From the NCBI GenBank assembly GCA_040357565.1, contig JBDODJ010000034.1: 64,000 bases of DNA. One strand, 5' to 3'. A program made the translations under genes and the position numbers. A model generated the notes under the pieces. It worked only from the letters and a program-made list of their open reading frames with translations. It did no database searches and was not told the DNA's origin. Source of the DNA: Cercozoa sp. M6MM. Its lineage: Eukaryota > Protista > Endomyxa: Ascetosporea. Every line of letters begins with the position of its first letter. Position 1 is the first letter of the stretch. Positions 30 to 62,542 of the stretch are shown in pieces.

Positions 30-3000
30 GATGGAAGCACGTGTGACCACCAAGATTGTCGAATTCCTCAAGCTTAAAGTCAACGACCCGTGCGTTCTGC
101 TGTGTGTCCTGTGTGTGTATGACTTGTCGTTACCATACAGGAAAGAGACACAGTCGGTCTTGATTCTGGCGGCCTTGTTGCCGCTTCTGGGACTGCGTGA
201 TTTCGGTACCTCTGTCTATGTGCTCACGCAAACGTGTCCACCGGAATAACACTCACGTGCGCAGGTGCGCAAGTGACGGCACTGAACCTGCGACGCCGTG
301 CAGCCGATGCATGTGCCCGAGTGGTCGCCAAGTACACCGAGGCGGCCGACAATGATGAGTACCACGTGTCACACTGTCTCTAATGTGACTGACTGACTGA
401 GTGTGCGAACCGCTGTTCGTGTGTAGTGGCAGCTCCGAGTGCGCTTGCATCGCCTCCATATTTGATCGGTACTTTTTTTGTGTATTGGCGAGAAACGTAC
501 CAAGGAGCAGTAGGTATGTGTGTATGGATGTAGTTGCGTGGCTCTGTGCGAGCAAACTTCCTCTCATTTTCGCGGAAAGTTCGGCGCTGGTTCCTTGCGT
601 TTCCTGCTGCAGCAGTCACAGGCGTACCTTCTCCCTGGATGTCTGCTCCCTTCTGAAGTTGCTGTCCACTCAGACTGGCCTACGAGGTGGTCACGCCACT
701 CCTGCGTCGTTTCTGTCAACTTGTCGATTTGGACACGTTGGGTGTGTGTCTTTGTATCTGTCGCTTTTCTCGGTATCACACCGCTCGGTATCCCTTGCTC
801 GCAGTGAGCCAGACCGACGCCAAGGTGGAAGACGGCACTCTTGAGCAGCTGGCGGAGGTCTCGCGCGAGATCTCTCGCTTTGAAGCCTACCTGCGGCACG
901 GCAGAGACCAGTGCGCTTGCCTCTTGATTCTCCCTGACACCAGCCCTTTACTCCCGCACACACACACACACTTACACACACACTCATACACTTACACACA
1001 CACACATACACACACACACAGGGCCATGAAAGAAGAGGAAGCGACGAAACTGGCGGCGCTTGCGCACATCCAGGGTAGAGCCTGTTTGTTCTTTCGTTCC
1101 CCCTGGTGTTATATACTTCGACACAGAAGGCAAGGAGGCCGACGCGAGTGCTCTGTTTCTGCTGTGGCAGCAGCTTCTATCGGAATGTCCAAACGACGGT
1201 TTCTTCGACGGTGTGAGTCGATCGCTGCGTGCGCCGGTTCTAGGAGCTGAGGCTACGGTGTTGCGCAGTCGGCTGCACCGTCAGTTGACACTGAGCGATC
1301 AGAGCGCACGTGACCACAAAACTGATGAGTGCGAACGCGAGTTGCACGACTTGCTGCACCGTCTGCAGTCAACACAAGTCACGTTGGAGAAACGCTTCCT
1401 CGAGTCGCGTGTTGCCATGGTACCGCTGACCTGTCCTCTCATCTTAGTCAGTTTTCACTTGCTCACTATGCACTGTCATACAGGCGATCACTATGGACGA
1501 GCGCGCTCGTGGCAGACTCACGAGGTAGCTAGTCTACTCTGGTCTTCCCGTTCTCTCCATATCCCCCTGTAGTACTGCCGTGGACGACGTGTTCTTCGTG
1601 GTCAAACAGAGTTGTCTGCGTGCCATCAGCACACGCGATGCGCCCACCGCCTGTGCTGCACTCAATCTGGTAGCCTTCTTACTGCCCCCTTCCTCCTTTA
1701 ATCGTACATTTTGTGTGAACTCTGTTCAGGCCATAGCAGCATTGGACACTGACCTGCTGTCGTGGATCTCCGCGCGGCTGCAGACGGCACTCGCGTCGTC
1801 GGACTCGAGTTACACGCAACTGTTCGTGTCACTTAATAATGCTGGTACCAGTGTATGTAGGTGCACCGCAAAGAGTGCAGTTCGGAGGTGTTGCCGTGCT
1901 GGTGTGCAGGAGTGGCAGCTGACCATGTGGGCACTCTCAAGACGGCGCTCGAGCAGGAGGTGACGACTGTATTCGCCAGCGAGAAGGGTGACAAGGAGAC
2001 CAGTATGCTCACGCATGTGCTCGACGAGATGGCCCTGCTAGCACCTCGCTTTCACCAGGTACCTGCCTGCCTTACCTTAACCCACCTACCTTACCTACCT
2101 AACTTACCTACCTACCTTACCTACCTAACTTACCTACCTAACTTACCTACCTAACTTACCCATCGTACCTACCTACCTCCTTGGTAACCCTTCTTTACTT
2201 TGCTGCCACATTGCACACGAGCAGGAACGTTCGCTGTCGTTGCGCACGTTCGTGAACAAAACCTTGCGTCCCAGAATCGCTGCTCTCAACGCTGACTTTG
2301 GGGTACTCTTGGGTCGCTCTCTTTGCCCCTTTTCTCCCTTTAGCCTCCCTCTTTTCAATATTTCCCTGCTGTCAGTGCGACCTGTCGCGTGTCGATGAGG
2401 CGCAGTTTGTGCGACTGTGCCAGGCTGGCGATGCCGACTTTTCGCAGGAGGGTGCCTTACCCTTACTCTCCTCCCCTTTACCCTTCTACCCCATGTTATA
2501 ACCATCAGTGGGGGCTTCCTGGCAAGAACAAGCGCACGCTGCTCTCGCCGGCGAGCTGGCCGTCTCTTTTGCCGCACGTGTCAGGCACGCCCTTCAGCCG
2601 GTACCTCTGGCTCTAACGAGTTTACGAGTTTGCACCCTTCAGAATATGTAAAGACACTTTTATTGTGCAGACCATGGTGTCACTGCGTCGGGCACTGACG
2701 GCGTGCAACCTGGAAGACGCTGTGCTGCACGTGGCACGTGTCGTTACCGACGGCGTCGAGTCGCGTCTTTTTGGTGGCCACTGGCGTTTCTCCCAGTGGG
2801 GTGCTATGGTACAACCGTCTGTTCCCGCATGTCTATCGTACGTGTCTGTGTTTCTGGTGTCCAGTTGCTCGAACAACAGTTGCGCCTTTGTCGCTCCTTC
2901 TTCGCGTCCTTTGCTGCCACGGCGGCACGCGATGCCTTCGATCGCCTACTTCGCTGCGCCGCGGTGTTGCAGGTACCCCGGGCTTGACGTGTCTTCAAAC

Positions 3001-3201
3001 TTTCTTTGGCGGGTCTGGGGGTGGGTTGGGTTACTCCTCAGCACGCAGTGCGAGCGACCTGAGGACGCGCGCGAGTTGCTACAGATGGAGCAGCGGCTGC
3101 ACAAGGGTCAGCGCCGACTGCTGAGCAGCGAGGCTGCCACGCTGCTCGCCATGCGCGTTGACGTGCAGCGCGACGACATCCTTCGTGTTTTGAGCGATTA
3201 A
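30..3201 (+). CDS. COG4: Conserved oligomeric Golgi complex subunit 4 (5' end lies outside the window; about 18 introns in the window)
   Basis: Spliced translation gives VDDVFFVVKQSCLRAISTRDAPTACAALN, FSQWGA..QLEQQLRLCRSFF...RDAFDRLLRCAAVLQ and terminal RLLSSEAATLLAMRVDVQRDDILRVLSD*. These match recalled COG4 motifs (VDDVFYIVKKCIGRA; RLTPAEVRQVLALRIDF). Confidence 0.85.
2059..2180 (+). repeat. Intronic (TACC/ACCTAACTT)n low-complexity repeat
   Basis: Tandem ACCTAACTTACCT-type units directly follow the donor CAG|GTACCTG in a COG4 intron. Confidence 0.9.
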
Positions 3202-3626
3202 CTTCTATGGGCAATCCGTTGTTTGACTCTGTTACATATCAATAATTGTCCGGTAACTGCAGTACACAGCACTCAACGCGGTAGTTTTTCTTTTTTTTTA
3301 ACGTTTTGGTGACCAAGCCAGTCCAAACGGACCGAAGCTCCTGGGCCAAGGCGTGAACTGTCGGTTCTATCAACGCGTGTTTCACCAGTGCCTGTGGCAC
3401 TAAGAACTGAATATCACGCCAACGACGCACAAAGAGTGCTGTATTTCGCGTTTTTACTTGCCTCACTTGATCCGCGTCGCTTGTCACTGCTTGCAAGTTG
3501 ACACTATCGTCATCGCCTCCAATGCTCAAGCAGTCGCCAGTGCTGGCGCCGTTGCCGGCAAGTGTGGTTTGTCTGCCTTACGTGCTTATGTCTGCCACAA
3601 GTGCATATGTGTCGTAGCTGTCGAAC

Positions 3627-5782
3627 ATGGACATTGAGGAGCTTGCCTACGATAGCGCGGGTTCACTGTTGCGACACGCTGCGACAGAGGGTTCTTTGCC
3701 GGAATCGGTCCGTGCAGGTATTGTAAAAAACCCCCGATCCTCAAAGAGTGCTACCCCGTGTGTGGCCCAGTGCTCCGCTTGCAAAAGCGTCGCATCGCGT
3801 ACCGAGCGCTCTTTTTGTTTTTAAAGAATGGTGCGGCTGCCTATTCGTTCAAGGCTGCTCTGAGCATTCTGGTACCCTTCAACCGTCATGTTCTTGTTGC
3901 TTTTGATGTTCACTTGATACCCCTTATTGTTCAGGGCACACTGTTGGCACGGCCGAAGCGGCTGTTGCGACGACCGCGTGCCGTGCTGCGGGCAGCTTTC
4001 GGCGTCGACTCGCTGCGATTTGGCGCTTCTGTAGCCTCCCTTGTGTCTTTTAACCCCTCCCGTTTACGCCTTGGTGATGCATAGGTGGGTGGTGCCACGG
4101 GTGTCTACAACCTACTGCTGCGCTTCCTGCGTCGGTTCCGTCAGAAGGACGACTATTTCAACACTGCAGTCGCCGGTTTTGTGTCAGGTCTGATGCTGCG
4201 CTTTGATACCCCTGTACGTTTCGTCCCCTGCCATCTTTTCTCACCGTCATTCCAGACTTTGGTCTGTAGGGAAGGAGACGCACAGTCGCGACGTACTTTT
4301 TCTGTCGTGCTATTGACTTTCTGTGCAGTGCGTTGGCCAAGCGAGAGGTACTATTGTCCTTGTCACCTGCTTGCTGCCGTTGTTATTCCCACGACACTTC
4401 TGTGTTATGCAGATGCACTTGCTGCCGGAAGCGATGCGTCCGCATGTTGTCACTGCTCTTTTCCAGATTGGTACACACCCTCCCTCTGCTGCCTTATCCC
4501 TGTCACACCTGTGTCTGTAGCCAGTGCAGTCATCATGTACGCGTGGCACGTGTACCCGGATGCGCTGCCCAAGTCTTACCACAGGTAGTCCACATGCCTT
4601 GGGGTATTTATTCATTCTGACTCCTTGGGCAGGTGGATCAGTCACAAGGGACACATCGATCACCGAACTCGTCAGGCGATCGAAGACATCTGTCAACGTG
4701 GCGGTCCCACCAAGTACTTTGTCTCCTTTCTTCCTTCGTCCTTCTCCACCTCCTTACTTCCTTGTCTTCAGGCACGTGGATCTTACAAGCTGGTGCCAGG
4801 AGTGGAACATGCCGCGTGACTTCTCCAAGGTCGAGTATCCGCGTCGACTGCCATGTCAGGTAGAAACACAATATACCTAGGTGGCCACGGGAGGGGGCAA
4901 CCGCTGAATATACCTAGGTGATGCACCCGTGGTCGCCGCACAGCTGCACCAAAGGCGCCGCCATGCAGTGGTTCTACGGCATCGGTCGGGCACTGCCCGT
5001 CTACTGTACCCTCTTACCCCTTACTCTGACCCCTTGACCCCTTGGAGCTGTGCTTTTTCTGGCAGTGCCGGTGCACTTGCTTCCGCTGCTTTTGTTCCGC
5101 TTCGGCAAGCTGCGCAGTGTATTACTGTCTTATGCTTGTGTTCATGTATTGTCATCTGTACTGTCCATGCGTACTGTACGTTTGACGTAGGCGCCGATTG
5201 AAACGCTGCGCCGTGTCACGTTTGCTCTTGTGCGCAGTTCCGTCTTTCTTACCTCGTTCCAAGGTACCCATTTGTCCCTTCCCTTCCGTTATTCCCTTAC
5301 CTAACCTGTAATAATTTCTCCTAGGATTCTTCTGGTTCGCGTGGTGTCACTCGCGTAATCTGCTTGGTTTCGACCACCGCTACACGGTAACATTATGGCC
5401 TCTTTCTTTTTCTTCCGCTGACTTGAGTTGCATGGCCTCATGTCTGCTGTATTTGTGCAGACGGCATTCGCCGGTCTCTGGGCCGGTCTGTCGATCCTCA
5501 TCGAGAAGCAGTCGCGTCGACGCGAGCTGCTGCTGTTCTGCATGCCTCGCGTGCTGGAGGCGGCGTTTTCCATCGCACGCAAGAAGGGAATGCCGCGCGT
5601 GCCAGGCGGCGACGTTCTCCTGTTTGGTCTCGCAATGGCCATCACAAGTACTGCCTCTCTGTGTCACTTTGTACCCTGCTCATGTGAACATATGTGCTGC
5701 AGTGCCGATCTTTGAACACGACAAAAATGCCGACGTCATGGGCGACCGCTACCGCAAGATCTTGAGCATGCTTGTTCGGTAA
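3627..5782 (+). CDS. TMEM135: TMEM135-like multi-pass (peroxisomal) membrane protein, 14 introns
   Basis: Spliced protein contains GRRRTVATYFFCRA, IMYAWHVYPDALPKSY, LPCQVMHPWSPHSC, RSSVFLTSF, IEKQSRRRELLLFCMPR and GDVLLFGLAMA, which are typical of the TMEM135 family. Confidence 0.85.
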
Positions 5783-13043: not shown

Positions 13044-13913
13044 TTATAGCCTCAAAGCCATAGTAGTGTGGGCTACCGTTAATGCTACCGCATTCTTTGC
13101 TTGTACTGGCTGTCGAAAGCGAAAATGTGACCAAGTCGGCACAAGATCAATCGCCAATGCCGTGCTGTACAATAGCAATCAAACATGCGTACCGGCGAGA
13201 GAGAGAGAGACACACACACACACACACACACACACACNNNNNNNNNNNNNNNNNNNNNNNNNNNNNNNNNNNNNNNNNNNNNNNNNNNNNNNNNNNNNNN
13301 NNNNNNNNNNNNNNNNNNNNNNNNNNNNNNNNNNNNNACAACGAATGAGAGGAAGCCCACCTTCGTAGGTTGCAACTTGTGTGCCTTCTTCAACAGCAAG
13401 CGCGCTGCAGACTGACGCAGCACAGTCTGGGGGGGGGGGGGGGGAATAAAAAAGATAAGTCTACAGGAGAACAGCACGGGGACAAGTACCGTGTCACCCT
13501 CTGCCGTGCAGAAGTTGTCCATGTCGGCGCGCAACTCACCGACACGAGCGCCTTGCGAGTATCCATGCCCACTGCGCAGTTATCACGGGGTTAATACGAA
13601 AGGAAATATCTGCCAAGGAAAGTAAAGAGAGTACCCGCACATGATACGCAAACGCGACAATCGGTGGAGTGACCACTCGCCAATCGTAGCCTTAAGACCA
13701 CTGATACGCGCGTGGAAGTCGGCTGTGGCACCCTCTGAAAGGACAAACAACAAGTCAAGAGATAATGCAAACGAGCGTAGCAGTGCGTACCACGAACGTA
13801 GAGCTGCGTTAACTCAAAGGTGTGCATTGCATAGACGAAGCTCTCGGCCACAAATGACGACAACGCGCGCTGATGCGTCGTGTAATCCTTCAGCAAGGTC
13901 TCTTCTTGACCTG

Positions 13914-28961: not shown

Positions 28962-28971
28962 NNNNNNNNNN

Positions 28972-46177: not shown

Positions 46178-46747
46178 TTAGTTGGCGGCGGTCTTCGCCG
46201 AAGTGATCATCTCGATCAGCTTGACGTCGTCGCCGAGCACCTGCGGGCCGACAAGGACCGTCACGATGACGACCTCACCTGCAAAAGTGAAGTCAGTATA
46301 TCGACTCAAAGCAACAAGAGAATGCATGCAGGTGTTACCGTTGTCGAAGTCCTCCTTGACCTTCTGGCCGACCTCGCCCTCCTCGTCGAGCGGCATGACC
46401 TTCTCCTCACCCTCGTCGGTGATGAGCGTGACCTCGCCGTCCTCGTAGTTGATGACCTCGTACTCCTCCTTGTCCATGACCGGACGCGTGAGGCGGTCAC
46501 CACCCGGGTGCATCGACGACTCCGACTTGCCGGAGAACGTCACCTTGACGCGGTACGTGAACTTGGCGTGGCCGTGCTTGCCCGTCTTGGACATCTTGAC
46601 GTCCGACACAATGCCCGGCAGACCCGACTTGTCAGCAATGACCCACTGGCCGTTCTTGAGGTCGTGAGCCTGGATCGGGATCGTGAACGACGACAGGTCG
46701 GAGTTCTCCGGCATCTCGCGCTCAACGGCGTCGGGGAGCATGGACAT
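46178..46747 (-). CDS. eIF5A: Translation factor eIF5A (divergent)
   Basis: Hypusine motif SKTGKHGHAK. One CDS intron plus a 5'UTR intron. Strong G/C third-position bias. Confidence 0.93.
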   Translation of the reverse strand: MSMLPDAVEREMPENSDLSSFTIPIQAHDLKNGQWVIADKSGLPGIVSDVKMSKTGKHGHAKFTYRVKVTFSGKSESSMHPGGDRLTRPVMDKEEYEVINYEDGEVTLITDEGEEKVMPLDEEGEVGQKVKEDFDNGNTCMHSLVALSRYTDFTFAGEVVIVTVLVGPQVLGDDVKLIEMITSAKTAAN

Positions 46748-47427
46748 CTTGAAGGTGTGCCTGCAAAAATATGGCAACATAATTTTAAAAACAATCACAG
46801 AAATAAAAATCTCAAAAAACTCCTGCGTGTCACCAACAACACACTGCAGCGAACGGAACAAACCCAAACTGGGCAAAAACAGCGAAAGACTTAGTTTTTC
46901 AAACGCACACCACGTCAAACACGCCCAGCACGACACGGGAACGCAGCGACTGCACCCGGGCGCGTGGCCATCGCTCCACACGGCTCAAACACCGGAGCGA
47001 CAGCACACGCCACACTGGGAAACGCGGGATTTCGTCACTCGCGCGCCGCGCAGCCGTGCAGGTCTTGCATTTTCGTAGTGTCAACTCACGATGGGTCAAA
47101 CAGGCCAAAAGAGCGTTGTTTGAGGGACCGAACGATTCCTTGAATTTTCCGGCGAAAAACGCCGCGCGCTCCAACGCGATCAGTTAGTTTCAGCTCATCG
47201 CGGATGTGCCCGTTCGTGCATGCAGAGATTTAATCACATTGGATGCGTTGTGTGGGCTGTAAGCTTTAATTTTGTGAAGGGACTTGAACAGAATGCTCCG
47301 GCAACCTGGATTTGCCGTGCACATGCATCGCGCAGGTCACTGATGCCGTGCGGTAAGAGTTAGTGAGTTGAGTCTTATATGAAACCAACCAAGTCGTTCC
47401 CTGCACCAGCTACTCAGAAGCTTCAAG

Positions 47428-48239: not shown

Positions 48240-48866
48240 CGGGTCGGTCTTGCTCATCTTAGAGCCGCCGTTCTGCAACGACATGATGCGCGCGTCGCCC
48301 AGGACAACGGCCTCTGGCACCACAAAGACCGGGTCTTGCTTTTCTGTCCAAACAGTGCGTATATCAGGGTGTACGCACTTTAGAGAGTACATACCCATGT
48401 CGAGAAGCAGATGCGGCGGGCCATCAGCACGGTCATCGAACCGGTCACTAGACAAACAGACCTCTCGCGTATAAATCCAAACAAATTAGAAAAACCGCCA
48501 AGTACCATTGTTCTGCGAAGCTGTTGATTCGCACAGCAAGATCACGCGTCAGATCAATGTGCGGGATCTGATCCTCTCCTGGATAAACACATGCAAAAGT
48601 CCAAGAATGCACATAGCGGTGTCAGATGCACTACCAACAGGCACATGGGTGGCGTCGTAGAGCAGAATGTCGGCAGCCTGCAAAACAACGACACTACGTA
48701 CCCTGACCAGAGTTGTGTGAGTGACGACTACCTGCAACACAGGGTAAGTTAAAAGCGCCGACGACACACGCGTCTGTCGCTTCATGCCGTGTTTTGGCTG
48801 GTGTTTGGCCGACTTCTCCTACGGCACATGTAGACATGAAAACACGCTCAACATCCAAGCACACAT

Positions 48867-62532: not shown

Positions 62533-62542
62533 NNNNNNNNNN

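What the first reader, a model, noticed from the sequence alone, without database searches (positions are those of the whole stretch)
30..5782. Non-standard 5' splice-site code: GTAC(C/T) instead of GTAAGT
Seen: I placed 32 donors by frame continuity in COG4 (18) and TMEM135 (14). Of these, 19 begin GTAC, 22 have C at +4, only 1 has A at +4, only 4 have G at +5, and none is GTAAG. Three of the four +5G donors have G at +3 (GTGCGT, GTGTGT, GTGCGC), which looks compensatory. The same bias recurs across the window (e.g. 44521 on the minus strand, 45520, 52370, 52590, 60367). Established: canonical U1 (ACUUACCU) pairs with GUAAGU, the U6 ACAGAGA box contacts +4 to +6, +5G is among the most conserved intron positions, and the m6A of U6 faces +4. 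Inference: this organism may have altered U1 5'-end or U6 sequences, or a protein-driven mode of donor recognition, i.e. a divergent spliceosome.
Basis: partly seen in the sequence, partly recalled or inferred. Interest (0 to 1): 0.85.

Follow-up and report, generated by a model that had tools for sequence, protein, structure and literature searches.

The report
GTAC-type splice donors, ordinary snRNAs
In this intron-packed amoeba genome most introns really do begin G|GTAC instead of GTAAGT and have lost the usual G at +5. The splicing RNAs U1, U5 and U6 are nevertheless standard, so this is an unusual lineage-specific preference, not a rewired spliceosome.

Summary
A self-trained gene finder, started with no splice-site model, recovers 18 introns in COG4 and 14 in the TMEM135-like gene. 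Of these 32 donors, 19 are GTAC, 23 have +4C, 1 has +4A, 4 have +5G and none is GTAAG.

The same logo holds in 817 introns from 264 kb, the window plus 20 other loci. It is -1G 0.69, +3A 0.75, +4 C/T/G/A 0.52/0.24/0.15/0.09, and +5G 0.27, which is background.

Three checks support the placements:
- Forcing a metazoan donor matrix at the start converges on the same introns.
- Twelve HSP70 junctions fixed by profile coordinates all agree.
- The public 846-aa COG4 model shares 16 of the 18 donors.

All six U1 copies carry ACUUACCUG, U6 has ACAGAGA, and U5 loop 1 is standard. U2 and U4 are present, and no U11, U12 or U6atac was found. Genes of the METTL16, SNRNP27, U1-C and LUC7 types exist. +5G returns when +3 is G or +4 is T, so canonical pairing still operates.

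+4C with a standard U1 is already described in Thecamonas and the Mamiellales. The scan had noted this bias 52 times elsewhere in this genome. No RNA-seq check was possible.

The parts
30..3201 (+). 3' part of a COG4 gene (19 exons here; the gene begins upstream of the window)
   Evidence: Gene finder. The public model P0001 (846 aa) holds the exon peptides in order. Pfam COG4_m and COG4_C on P0001; COG4_m on exon 1574-1669.
3627..5782 (+). TMEM135-like gene (Tim17-family membrane protein), 15 exons
   Evidence: Gene finder. Pfam Tim17 on exon 4085-4213, E 1.3e-6. The TMEM135 name itself was not confirmed.
90..140 (+). intron, donor GTGCGT
206..264 (+). intron, donor GTACCT
359..426 (+). intron, donor GTACCA
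469..533 (+). intron, donor GTACTT
624..673 (+). intron, donor GTACCT
742..804 (+). intron, donor GTGTGT
911..1021 (+). intron, donor GTGCGC, holds an (AC)n repeat
1075..1126 (+). intron, donor GTAGAG
1420..1483 (+). intron, donor GTACCG
1525..1572 (+). intron, donor GTAGCT
1670..1729 (+). intron, donor GTAGCC
1845..1909 (+). intron, donor GTACCA
2059..2224 (+). intron, donor GTACCT, holds a TACC/TAAC-type repeat
2303..2375 (+). intron, donor GTACTC
2452..2526 (+). intron, donor GTGCCT. The public model uses the same donor but an acceptor 18 nt upstream (intron ends at 2508).
2601..2670 (+). intron, donor GTACCT
2809..2864 (+). intron, donor GTACAA; read through in the public model
   Evidence: The Pfam COG4_C match on P0001 stops at residue 716, the end of the preceding exon.
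2973..3048 (+). intron, donor GTACCC; read through in the public model
3691..3770 (+). intron, donor GTTCTT; least certain placement (an alternative GTATTG donor at 3718 is possible)
   Evidence: sequence
3872..3934 (+). intron, donor GTACCC
4031..4084 (+). intron, donor GTAGCC
4214..4269 (+). intron, donor GTACGT
4348..4412 (+). intron, donor GTACTA
4471..4529 (+). intron, donor GTACAC
4585..4632 (+). intron, donor GTAGTC
4714..4771 (+). intron, donor GTACTT
4860..4917 (+). intron, donor GTAGAA
5006..5065 (+). intron, donor GTACCC
5119..5190 (+). intron, donor GTATTA
5264..5324 (+). intron, donor GTACCC
5387..5460 (+). intron, donor GTAACA (the only +4A)
5648..5702 (+). intron, donor GTACTG

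Best explanation
These are ordinary major-type (U2-type) GT-AG introns of a very intron-dense rhizarian amoeba, removed by a spliceosome whose RNA recognition elements are standard. What differs is the lineage's donor preference: (A)G|GTA, then C at +4, no preference at +5, and a T-rich +6 to +8.

Shown: the conserved pairing with U1 is reduced to about four contiguous base pairs (-1G, +1G, +2U, +3A with U1 C9, C8, A7, U6). The +5G pair with U1 C4 and U6 C42 is not a general requirement. It is recruited as compensation when +3 is G or +4 is T.

Inferred: the remaining specificity comes from three things.
- Strong depletion of GTA inside exons.
- Very short introns of narrow length (median 64 nt), that is, intron definition.
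- The U-rich tract just downstream. It may pair at +6/+7 with the two A's at the 5' end of this U1, or bind a TIA-1/Nam8-like protein.

The mild but specific +4C preference (about 0.26 bits) most likely reflects how the 5' splice site sits against U6 A43 and its protein surroundings, not a change in any snRNA sequence. This is a further, more extreme case of the atypical +4-pyrimidine donor with an uncompensated U1, already described in Thecamonas and the Mamiellales.
For: Donor logo from 817 introns, the same in the window and in 20 other loci, and robust to a forced canonical start.

Placements validated 12/12 on HSP70 and 16/18 against the public COG4 model.

snRNAs:
- U1, six copies with identical canonical arms; no variant arm in the assembly.
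- U6, nine copies with canonical ACAGAGA and AGC.
- U5, eight copies with canonical loop 1.
- U2 and U4 present.
- U11, U12 and U6atac not found.

Compensation:
- +3G with +5G, odds ratio 4.5, p 2e-15. The odds ratio is still 2.6, p 1e-5, without GTGTG donors.
- +4T with +5G, odds ratio 3.1.
- GTAC and GTAG donors have only 14% +5G.

True donors against exonic decoy GT (log2 ratios): +3A +3.1, -1G +1.7, +6 to +8 T +1.1 to +1.4, +4C +0.7. Only 9% of exonic GT are GTA.

Intron length has quartiles of 57 and 78 nt.

Precedent: standard U1 with +4C in Thecamonas and with GYGCGY in the Mamiellales (bioRxiv 10.1101/2022.06.08.495308). snRNAs are invariant across +4 A/U switches in yeasts (PMC10581693).
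Against: The logo therefore rests on prediction, homology and a public gene model.

C at +4 is positively enriched: 1.8-fold over GTA-N inside introns and 2.2-fold over intron composition. A purely relaxed, drifting consensus does not explain why it is C rather than T.

A METTL16-type gene is present. In fungi and plants METTL16 goes with +4A, not +4C (PMC10581693), so something about +4 reading differs here.

The roles of the U-rich tract and of intron definition are inferred, not tested.

The mature 5' end of U1 is unknown.
Confidence: 0.68

Rival explanations
1. A genuinely re-tuned spliceosome at the protein or modification level. A changed residue in SNRNP27K, PRP8, U1-C or LUC7, or an unmethylated or differently modified U6 A43, specifically favours C at +4 and removes the need for +5G.
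For: +4C is enriched over every background tried, and +4T is depleted to half its intronic context. +5G is at background. METTL16-type and SNRNP27-type genes are present, yet +4A is not preferred, contrary to the association reported in PMC10581693.
Against: Nothing in the factors themselves was shown to be changed. The information at +4 is small (0.26 bits). The canonical compensation rules persist.
Confidence: 0.24
2. Altered U1 5' arm or U6 ACAGAGA box co-evolved with the donors, as in Entamoeba or Mastigamoeba (U1) or Cyanidioschyzon (U6).
For: None found.
Against: Six U1, nine U6 and eight U5 genes are all canonical at the recognition sites. The exact search for a GTACCTGG-armed U1 body found nothing in the assembly.
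Confidence: 0.02
3. Artefact: the donors were mis-placed, by hand or by my gene finder, with a bias towards GTAC.
For: The retrained finder uses its own donor matrix, which could reinforce a bias. The purely signal-free pass gives a noisier 23-30% GTAC.
Against: The signal-free pass already shows a threefold GTAC excess and only 3 GTAAG in 518. A forced canonical start converges to the same set, with 765 introns shared. 12/12 HSP70 junctions fixed by profile coordinates agree. 16/18 COG4 donors equal those of the public model, whose annotation pipeline was trained on RNA-seq according to PMC13746701.
Confidence: 0.02
4. The introns are minor-type (U12-like) or a young transposon-derived 'introner' family, either of which would explain a shared odd 5' end.
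For: Pyrimidine-rich +4 to +8 is superficially like the U12-type donor RTATCCTT. GGTACC is a palindrome.
Against: U11, U12 and U6atac were not found. Only 6 of 817 donors read GTATCCT. Only 13 of 333,336 intron pairs share detectable similarity. GGTACC occurs exactly as often as independent positions predict, 76 observed against 76.4 expected.
Confidence: 0.02

Closest known systems
+4-pyrimidine donor preference with a standard U1 in Thecamonas trahens and the Mamiellales (Roy & Bowser, bioRxiv 10.1101/2022.06.08.495308)
   Same: C (or Y) is preferred at intron position +4 while the single strong U1 candidate keeps the standard pairing sequence. There is no compensatory snRNA change.
   Different: The Mamiellales motif GYGCGY keeps +5G. 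Here the main class (GTAC, GTAG) has only 14% +5G and +3 is A, not G. That paper frames atypical donors mainly in lineages that lost most of their introns. This genome has about 7.5 introns per kb of coding sequence.
5' splice site +4 A/U switches in Saccharomycotina linked to METTL16 and SNRNP27K (Parker et al. 2023, PMC10581693)
   Same: A lineage-level change of preference at +4 with invariant U1 ACUUACC and U6 ACAGA.
   Different: There the switch is almost only A to U, it goes with loss of METTL16 or SNRNP27K, and +5 hardly varies. Here the preferred base is C, T is depleted, +5G is lost, and genes of both families are detectable.
Co-evolved U1 snRNAs of Entamoeba and Mastigamoeba, and the U6 ACUGA of Cyanidioschyzon
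   Same: Atypical donor consensus; Mastigamoeba donors also carry C at +4.
   Different: Those lineages changed the snRNA. This one did not.
Exon-anchored ('AG//GU', U5-class) 5' splice sites as against U6-class '//GURAG' sites (PMC9803359 and PMC11732430, from their abstracts)
   Same: Most donors here rely on -1G and +1 to +3 and lack +4 to +6 complementarity to U6. A minority class with +5G exists.
   Different: In this genome the exon side and +5G are not anticorrelated (-1G against +5G odds ratio 1.09). The trade-off is among +3, +4 and +5 instead.

Membership tests
Major (U2-type) GT-AG spliceosomal introns | GT...AG termini that restore the reading frame of a conserved protein | tested here: met
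   10 HSP70 junctions have a unique GT-AG solution at the length demanded by Pfam coordinates, and 2 more match by length. The COG4 exons are contiguous in P0001.
Major (U2-type) GT-AG spliceosomal introns | U1, U2, U4, U5 and U6 snRNA genes with standard recognition sequences | tested here: met
   The U2 and U4 sequences were not inspected; only their scores were seen.
Major (U2-type) GT-AG spliceosomal introns | Donor complementary to the U1 5' arm across +3 to +6 (GTRAGT) | tested here: not met
   Mean of 4.96 matches out of 9 to CAG|GTAAGT, with a modal contiguous run of 4. GTAAG occurs in 10 of 817 and +5G is 0.27. This is a consensus, not a strict requirement of the class.
Major (U2-type) GT-AG spliceosomal introns | Pyrimidine-rich 3' region, YAG acceptor and a branch-point motif | tested here: inconclusive
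   The acceptor is T-rich, then R(-4) Y(-3) AG|G, with -3C at 0.72. No dominant branch motif was found: CTRAY occurs in 18% of introns with no preferred distance.
Minor (U12-type) introns | RTATCCTT donor and U11, U12, U4atac and U6atac snRNAs | tested here: not met
   6 of 817 donors read GTATCCT. No U12, U6atac or U11 hit was found. Absence in a draft assembly is not proof. U4atac was not searched.
Introner / transposon-derived intron families | Many introns with mutual sequence similarity | tested here: not met
   13 of 333,336 intron pairs at blastn E<1e-4.
snRNA-donor co-evolution (Entamoeba or Mastigamoeba type) | U1 arm changed so that it pairs with the atypical donor | tested here: not met
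METTL16/SNRNP27K-loss type of +4 switch (yeasts) | Absence of METTL16 and/or SNRNP27K, with +4U preferred | tested here: not met
   Methyltransf_10 exons at E 4e-12 and 6e-9, with DVGTGAS and NPP motifs, align to the human METTL16 catalytic domain. SNRNP27 domain pieces sum to 31.5 bits against a cut-off of 23.1. +4 is C 0.52 and T 0.24. Whether U6 is methylated, and whether the Met141-equivalent residue is kept, could not be tested.

The most novel reading that the evidence does not exclude
This amoeba splices thousands of introns whose 5' splice sites make no +4 to +6 pairing with U6 and actively prefer C opposite U6 A43, although it keeps METTL16- and SNRNP27K-type genes. If U6 A43 is unmethylated here, or if a changed protein contact reads +4C, it would be a natural exception to the METTL16/+4A rule. 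It would also be a new mode of 5' splice-site docking in one of the most intron-dense small genomes known.
Probability: 0.2. Interest if true: 0.7.

Novelty: new variant of a known kind. Interest (0 to 1): 0.45.

Why it matters
Position +5G and the +4 contact with U6 are usually treated as the most constrained parts of the 5' splice site. Here a free-living eukaryote has roughly ten or more introns per gene and standard U1, U5 and U6. It splices mainly through G|GTAC donors with no +5G.

This shows how far donor preference can move without any snRNA change. It does so in an intron-rich genome, not an intron-poor one.

It also offers a natural test of current ideas on U6 m6A, SNRNP27K and the two donor classes.

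Practically, gene predictors trained on canonical donors will mis-annotate this genome. The public COG4 model appears to read through two introns.

Tried and rejected

The U2, U4, LUC7, U1-C and SNRNP27 loci could therefore not be read.
- The paper on Plasmodiophora introns (PubMed 17618828) is not held.

**Gene-finder attempts that failed**
- The first finder, trained on long ORFs, was poor.
- A retraining run with too lenient an intron penalty produced about 3,000 spurious introns. I corrected it.

**Searches that were blank or uninformative**
- Exon-by-exon Pfam scans of COG4 and TMEM135 gave only two hits, COG4_m and Tim17. That is too few to test junctions.
- Exon peptides were compared with P0001 inside a script only.
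- The search for homologous proteins with the 97-aa exon was blank because of its length window.
- P0002 and P0003 from the representative search are low-complexity noise.

**Ideas rejected**
- GGTACC palindrome effect.
- Introner family.
- U12-type introns.
- Variant U1.
- Trinucleotide context as the whole explanation of +4C.

Full report
**What is there**

Bases 30-5782 hold the 3' part of a COG4 gene and a Tim17-family, TMEM135-like gene. Both are on the + strand and both are cut into many short exons. The window is contig C34 of a 23.61-Mb assembly in 2,235 contigs.

Several properties fit the draft genome of the rhizarian amoeba Cercozoa sp. M6MM, later named Lemnamoeba sinaloensis:
- Published size: 23.67 Mb in 2,244 scaffolds.
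- Published GC: 52.8%.
- Published intron load: 10 introns per mRNA in the draft, 13 per gene in the later assembly.
- Published abundance of AC repeats, which matches scaffold gaps here flanked by (AC)n.

The sources are PMC11069148, PMC13746701.

I wrote a gene finder that scores codon structure and needs only GT...AG. I seeded its codon model from the interiors of obvious exons, so the seeds carried no boundary information. I ran it on the window plus 20 other 10-kb pieces of the genome, 264 kb in all.

The signal-free pass is noisy but already informative. GTAC is three times over-represented, +4A is about 10%, and GTAAG occurs 3 times in 518 introns.

Letting the model learn donor, acceptor and length distributions from its own output converges on 817 introns with a median length of 64 nt. 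It returns exactly 18 introns in COG4 and 14 in the second gene. Among these 32 donors, 19 are GTAC, 23 have +4C, 1 has +4A, 4 have +5G (three of them with +3G) and none is GTAAG. By chance, 19 or more GTAC in 32 has a probability of about 1e-13.

**Controls on the placements**

- Forced canonical start. It ends on the same solution, with 765 introns shared.
- HSP70 paralogues elsewhere in the genome. Pfam profile coordinates of neighbouring exon matches fix the intron length. Ten junctions then have a single GT-AG solution, and two more are fixed by length. All twelve are the introns the finder predicts.
- Public COG4 model. A search of 1.84 billion proteins with one exon returned an 846-aa public model of this COG4, P0001 (Pfam COG4_m and COG4_C). 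The published annotation pipeline was trained with RNA-seq.
  - Seventeen of my exon peptides lie in P0001 in order.
  - Sixteen of the 18 donors are identical.
  - One acceptor differs by 18 nt.
  - The public model reads straight through 2809-3048, where I place two introns.
  - The COG4_C match stops exactly at that point, so the read-through is probably an annotation error.
- Pooled independent set. Across these 28 independently supported donors, 14 are GTAC, 3 have +4A and 6 have +5G.

**The genome-wide logo**

| Position | Frequencies |
|---|---|
| -2 | A 0.38 |
| -1 | G 0.69 |
| +3 | A 0.75, G 0.19 |
| +4 | C 0.52, T 0.24, G 0.15, A 0.09 |
| +5 | G 0.27, C 0.33 (no information) |
| +6 to +8 | T 0.44-0.50 |

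The window (245 introns) and the other loci (572 introns) agree.

Compared with GT dinucleotides inside exons, true donors are marked mainly by +3A, -1G and the T-rich tract, and only moderately by +4C. Exons are strongly depleted of GTA.

Against the context GTA-N inside introns, donors are 1.8-fold enriched for C and two-fold depleted for T. The low +4A is only mildly below context.

The acceptor is T-rich, followed by R-Y-A-G|G. No dominant branch motif appears.

**Testing the interpretation**

| Component | Result |
|---|---|
| U1 | Six copies, all with the arm TAACTTACCTGG |
| U1 variant with an arm pairing GUACC | None found |
| U6 | Nine identical copies; ACAGAGA box and AGC triad unchanged |
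| U5 | Eight copies; loop 1 is GCCUUUUAC |
| U2, U4 | Present |
| U11, U12, U6atac | Not found |
| METTL16-type methyltransferase | Present; SAM-binding and NPP motifs; aligns to the human METTL16 catalytic domain |
| SNRNP27 domain | Found in two adjacent pieces summing above Pfam's cut-off |
| U1-C zinc finger | Present |
| LUC7 | Present |

Neither altered snRNAs nor loss of the known +4-linked factors explains the logo.

**How it most likely works**

Donors fall into dependent classes. +5G is strongly associated with +3G. The odds ratio is 4.5, p 2e-15, and it is still 2.6 after removing GT-repeat donors. +5G is also associated with +4T (odds ratio 3.1). GTAC and GTAG donors carry only 14% +5G.

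This is the behaviour expected if standard U1 and U6 pairing still counts, but a G|GUA core is normally sufficient. I infer that three things supply the rest of the specificity:
- The narrow intron length, which favours intron definition.
- Exonic avoidance of GTA.
- The U-rich +6 to +8 tract.

Why C in particular is favoured at +4 remains unexplained. A protein contact or the modification state of U6 A43 is the obvious candidate.

Two other ideas can be dismissed. A palindrome effect of GGTACC is excluded. So is a transposon origin of the introns.

**Comparison with what is known**

Roy and Bowser describe a +4 pyrimidine preference with a standard U1 in Thecamonas trahens (+4C) and the Mamiellales (GYGCGY). 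They find compensating U1 changes only in Entamoeba and Mastigamoeba.

Parker and colleagues show repeated +4 A/U switches in yeasts with invariant snRNAs, linked to METTL16 and SNRNP27K.

The present case belongs to this kind but differs from the yeast switches and from the Mamiellales motif:
- The preferred base is C.
- +5G is lost in the main class.
- Both factor families are still detectable.
- The genome is extremely intron-rich.

The two papers on this organism mention only that 99.5% of introns are GT/AG. I found no description of the extended motif in the library searched.

**Limits**

- No reads could be laid on the window.
- Relatives could not be examined.
- The factor genes could not be read in full.
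- The scan's first readers had noted the same bias 52 times elsewhere in this genome, without follow-up. My sample from 20 other loci agrees with them.

Noticed in passing
window 2809-3048: The public 846-aa COG4 model reads through this stretch as 80 residues of implausible sequence. Two short introns (56 and 76 nt, together a multiple of 3) give a clean exon instead. Pfam COG4_C stops exactly at the preceding exon end, so this is probably an annotation error or retained introns.
   Followed up: partly
window 46340-46759 (-): A 140-aa exon encodes nearly all of eIF5A, including the hypusine-site motif. My gene finder wrongly fused it to the upstream class-I aminoacyl-tRNA synthetase-like gene (KMSK motif, exon 48243-48341).
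   Followed up: no
window 13238-13337, 28962-28971, 62533-62542: Runs of N (scaffold gaps) sit next to (AC)n repeats at the first two sites. At least 24 AC/GT microsatellites of 8 or more units lie in the 64 kb, many inside introns. This matches the AC-repeat richness reported for Lemnamoeba sinaloensis.
   Followed up: partly
G000 C280:11776-12401 and C513:7212-7909: U5 and U2 snRNA genes lie about 300-400 bp apart on the same strand on two different contigs, which suggests a repeated U5-U2 gene unit.
   Followed up: no
L001-L006 (U1 loci): All six U1 genes share AAAG or CAAG immediately upstream and GACCTCMCC immediately downstream, while the farther flanks differ. These are candidate start and 3'-box elements. 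Position 2 of the arm is A where human U1 has U, which would pair with the T-rich +7.
   Followed up: partly
G000 C55:52606-54734 (-), held in L046/L047/L050: One HSP70 paralogue has 5 of 11 donors of the GTAA type (GTAAAC, GTAAAT twice, GTAACT, GTAATT), against about 6% genome-wide. Donor usage is therefore not uniform between genes.
   Followed up: no
264-kb sample (window + L019-L038): Only 9% of GT dinucleotides inside predicted exons are followed by A, and GGTAC is nearly five times more frequent at donors (217) than in all exons together (46). This looks like selection against cryptic donors in coding sequence.
   Followed up: partly
264-kb sample, acceptors: Acceptors show a purine at -4 (80%) and C at -3 (72%), then G at the first exon base (46%): an RYAG|G motif. 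No clear branch-point consensus was found.
   Followed up: partly
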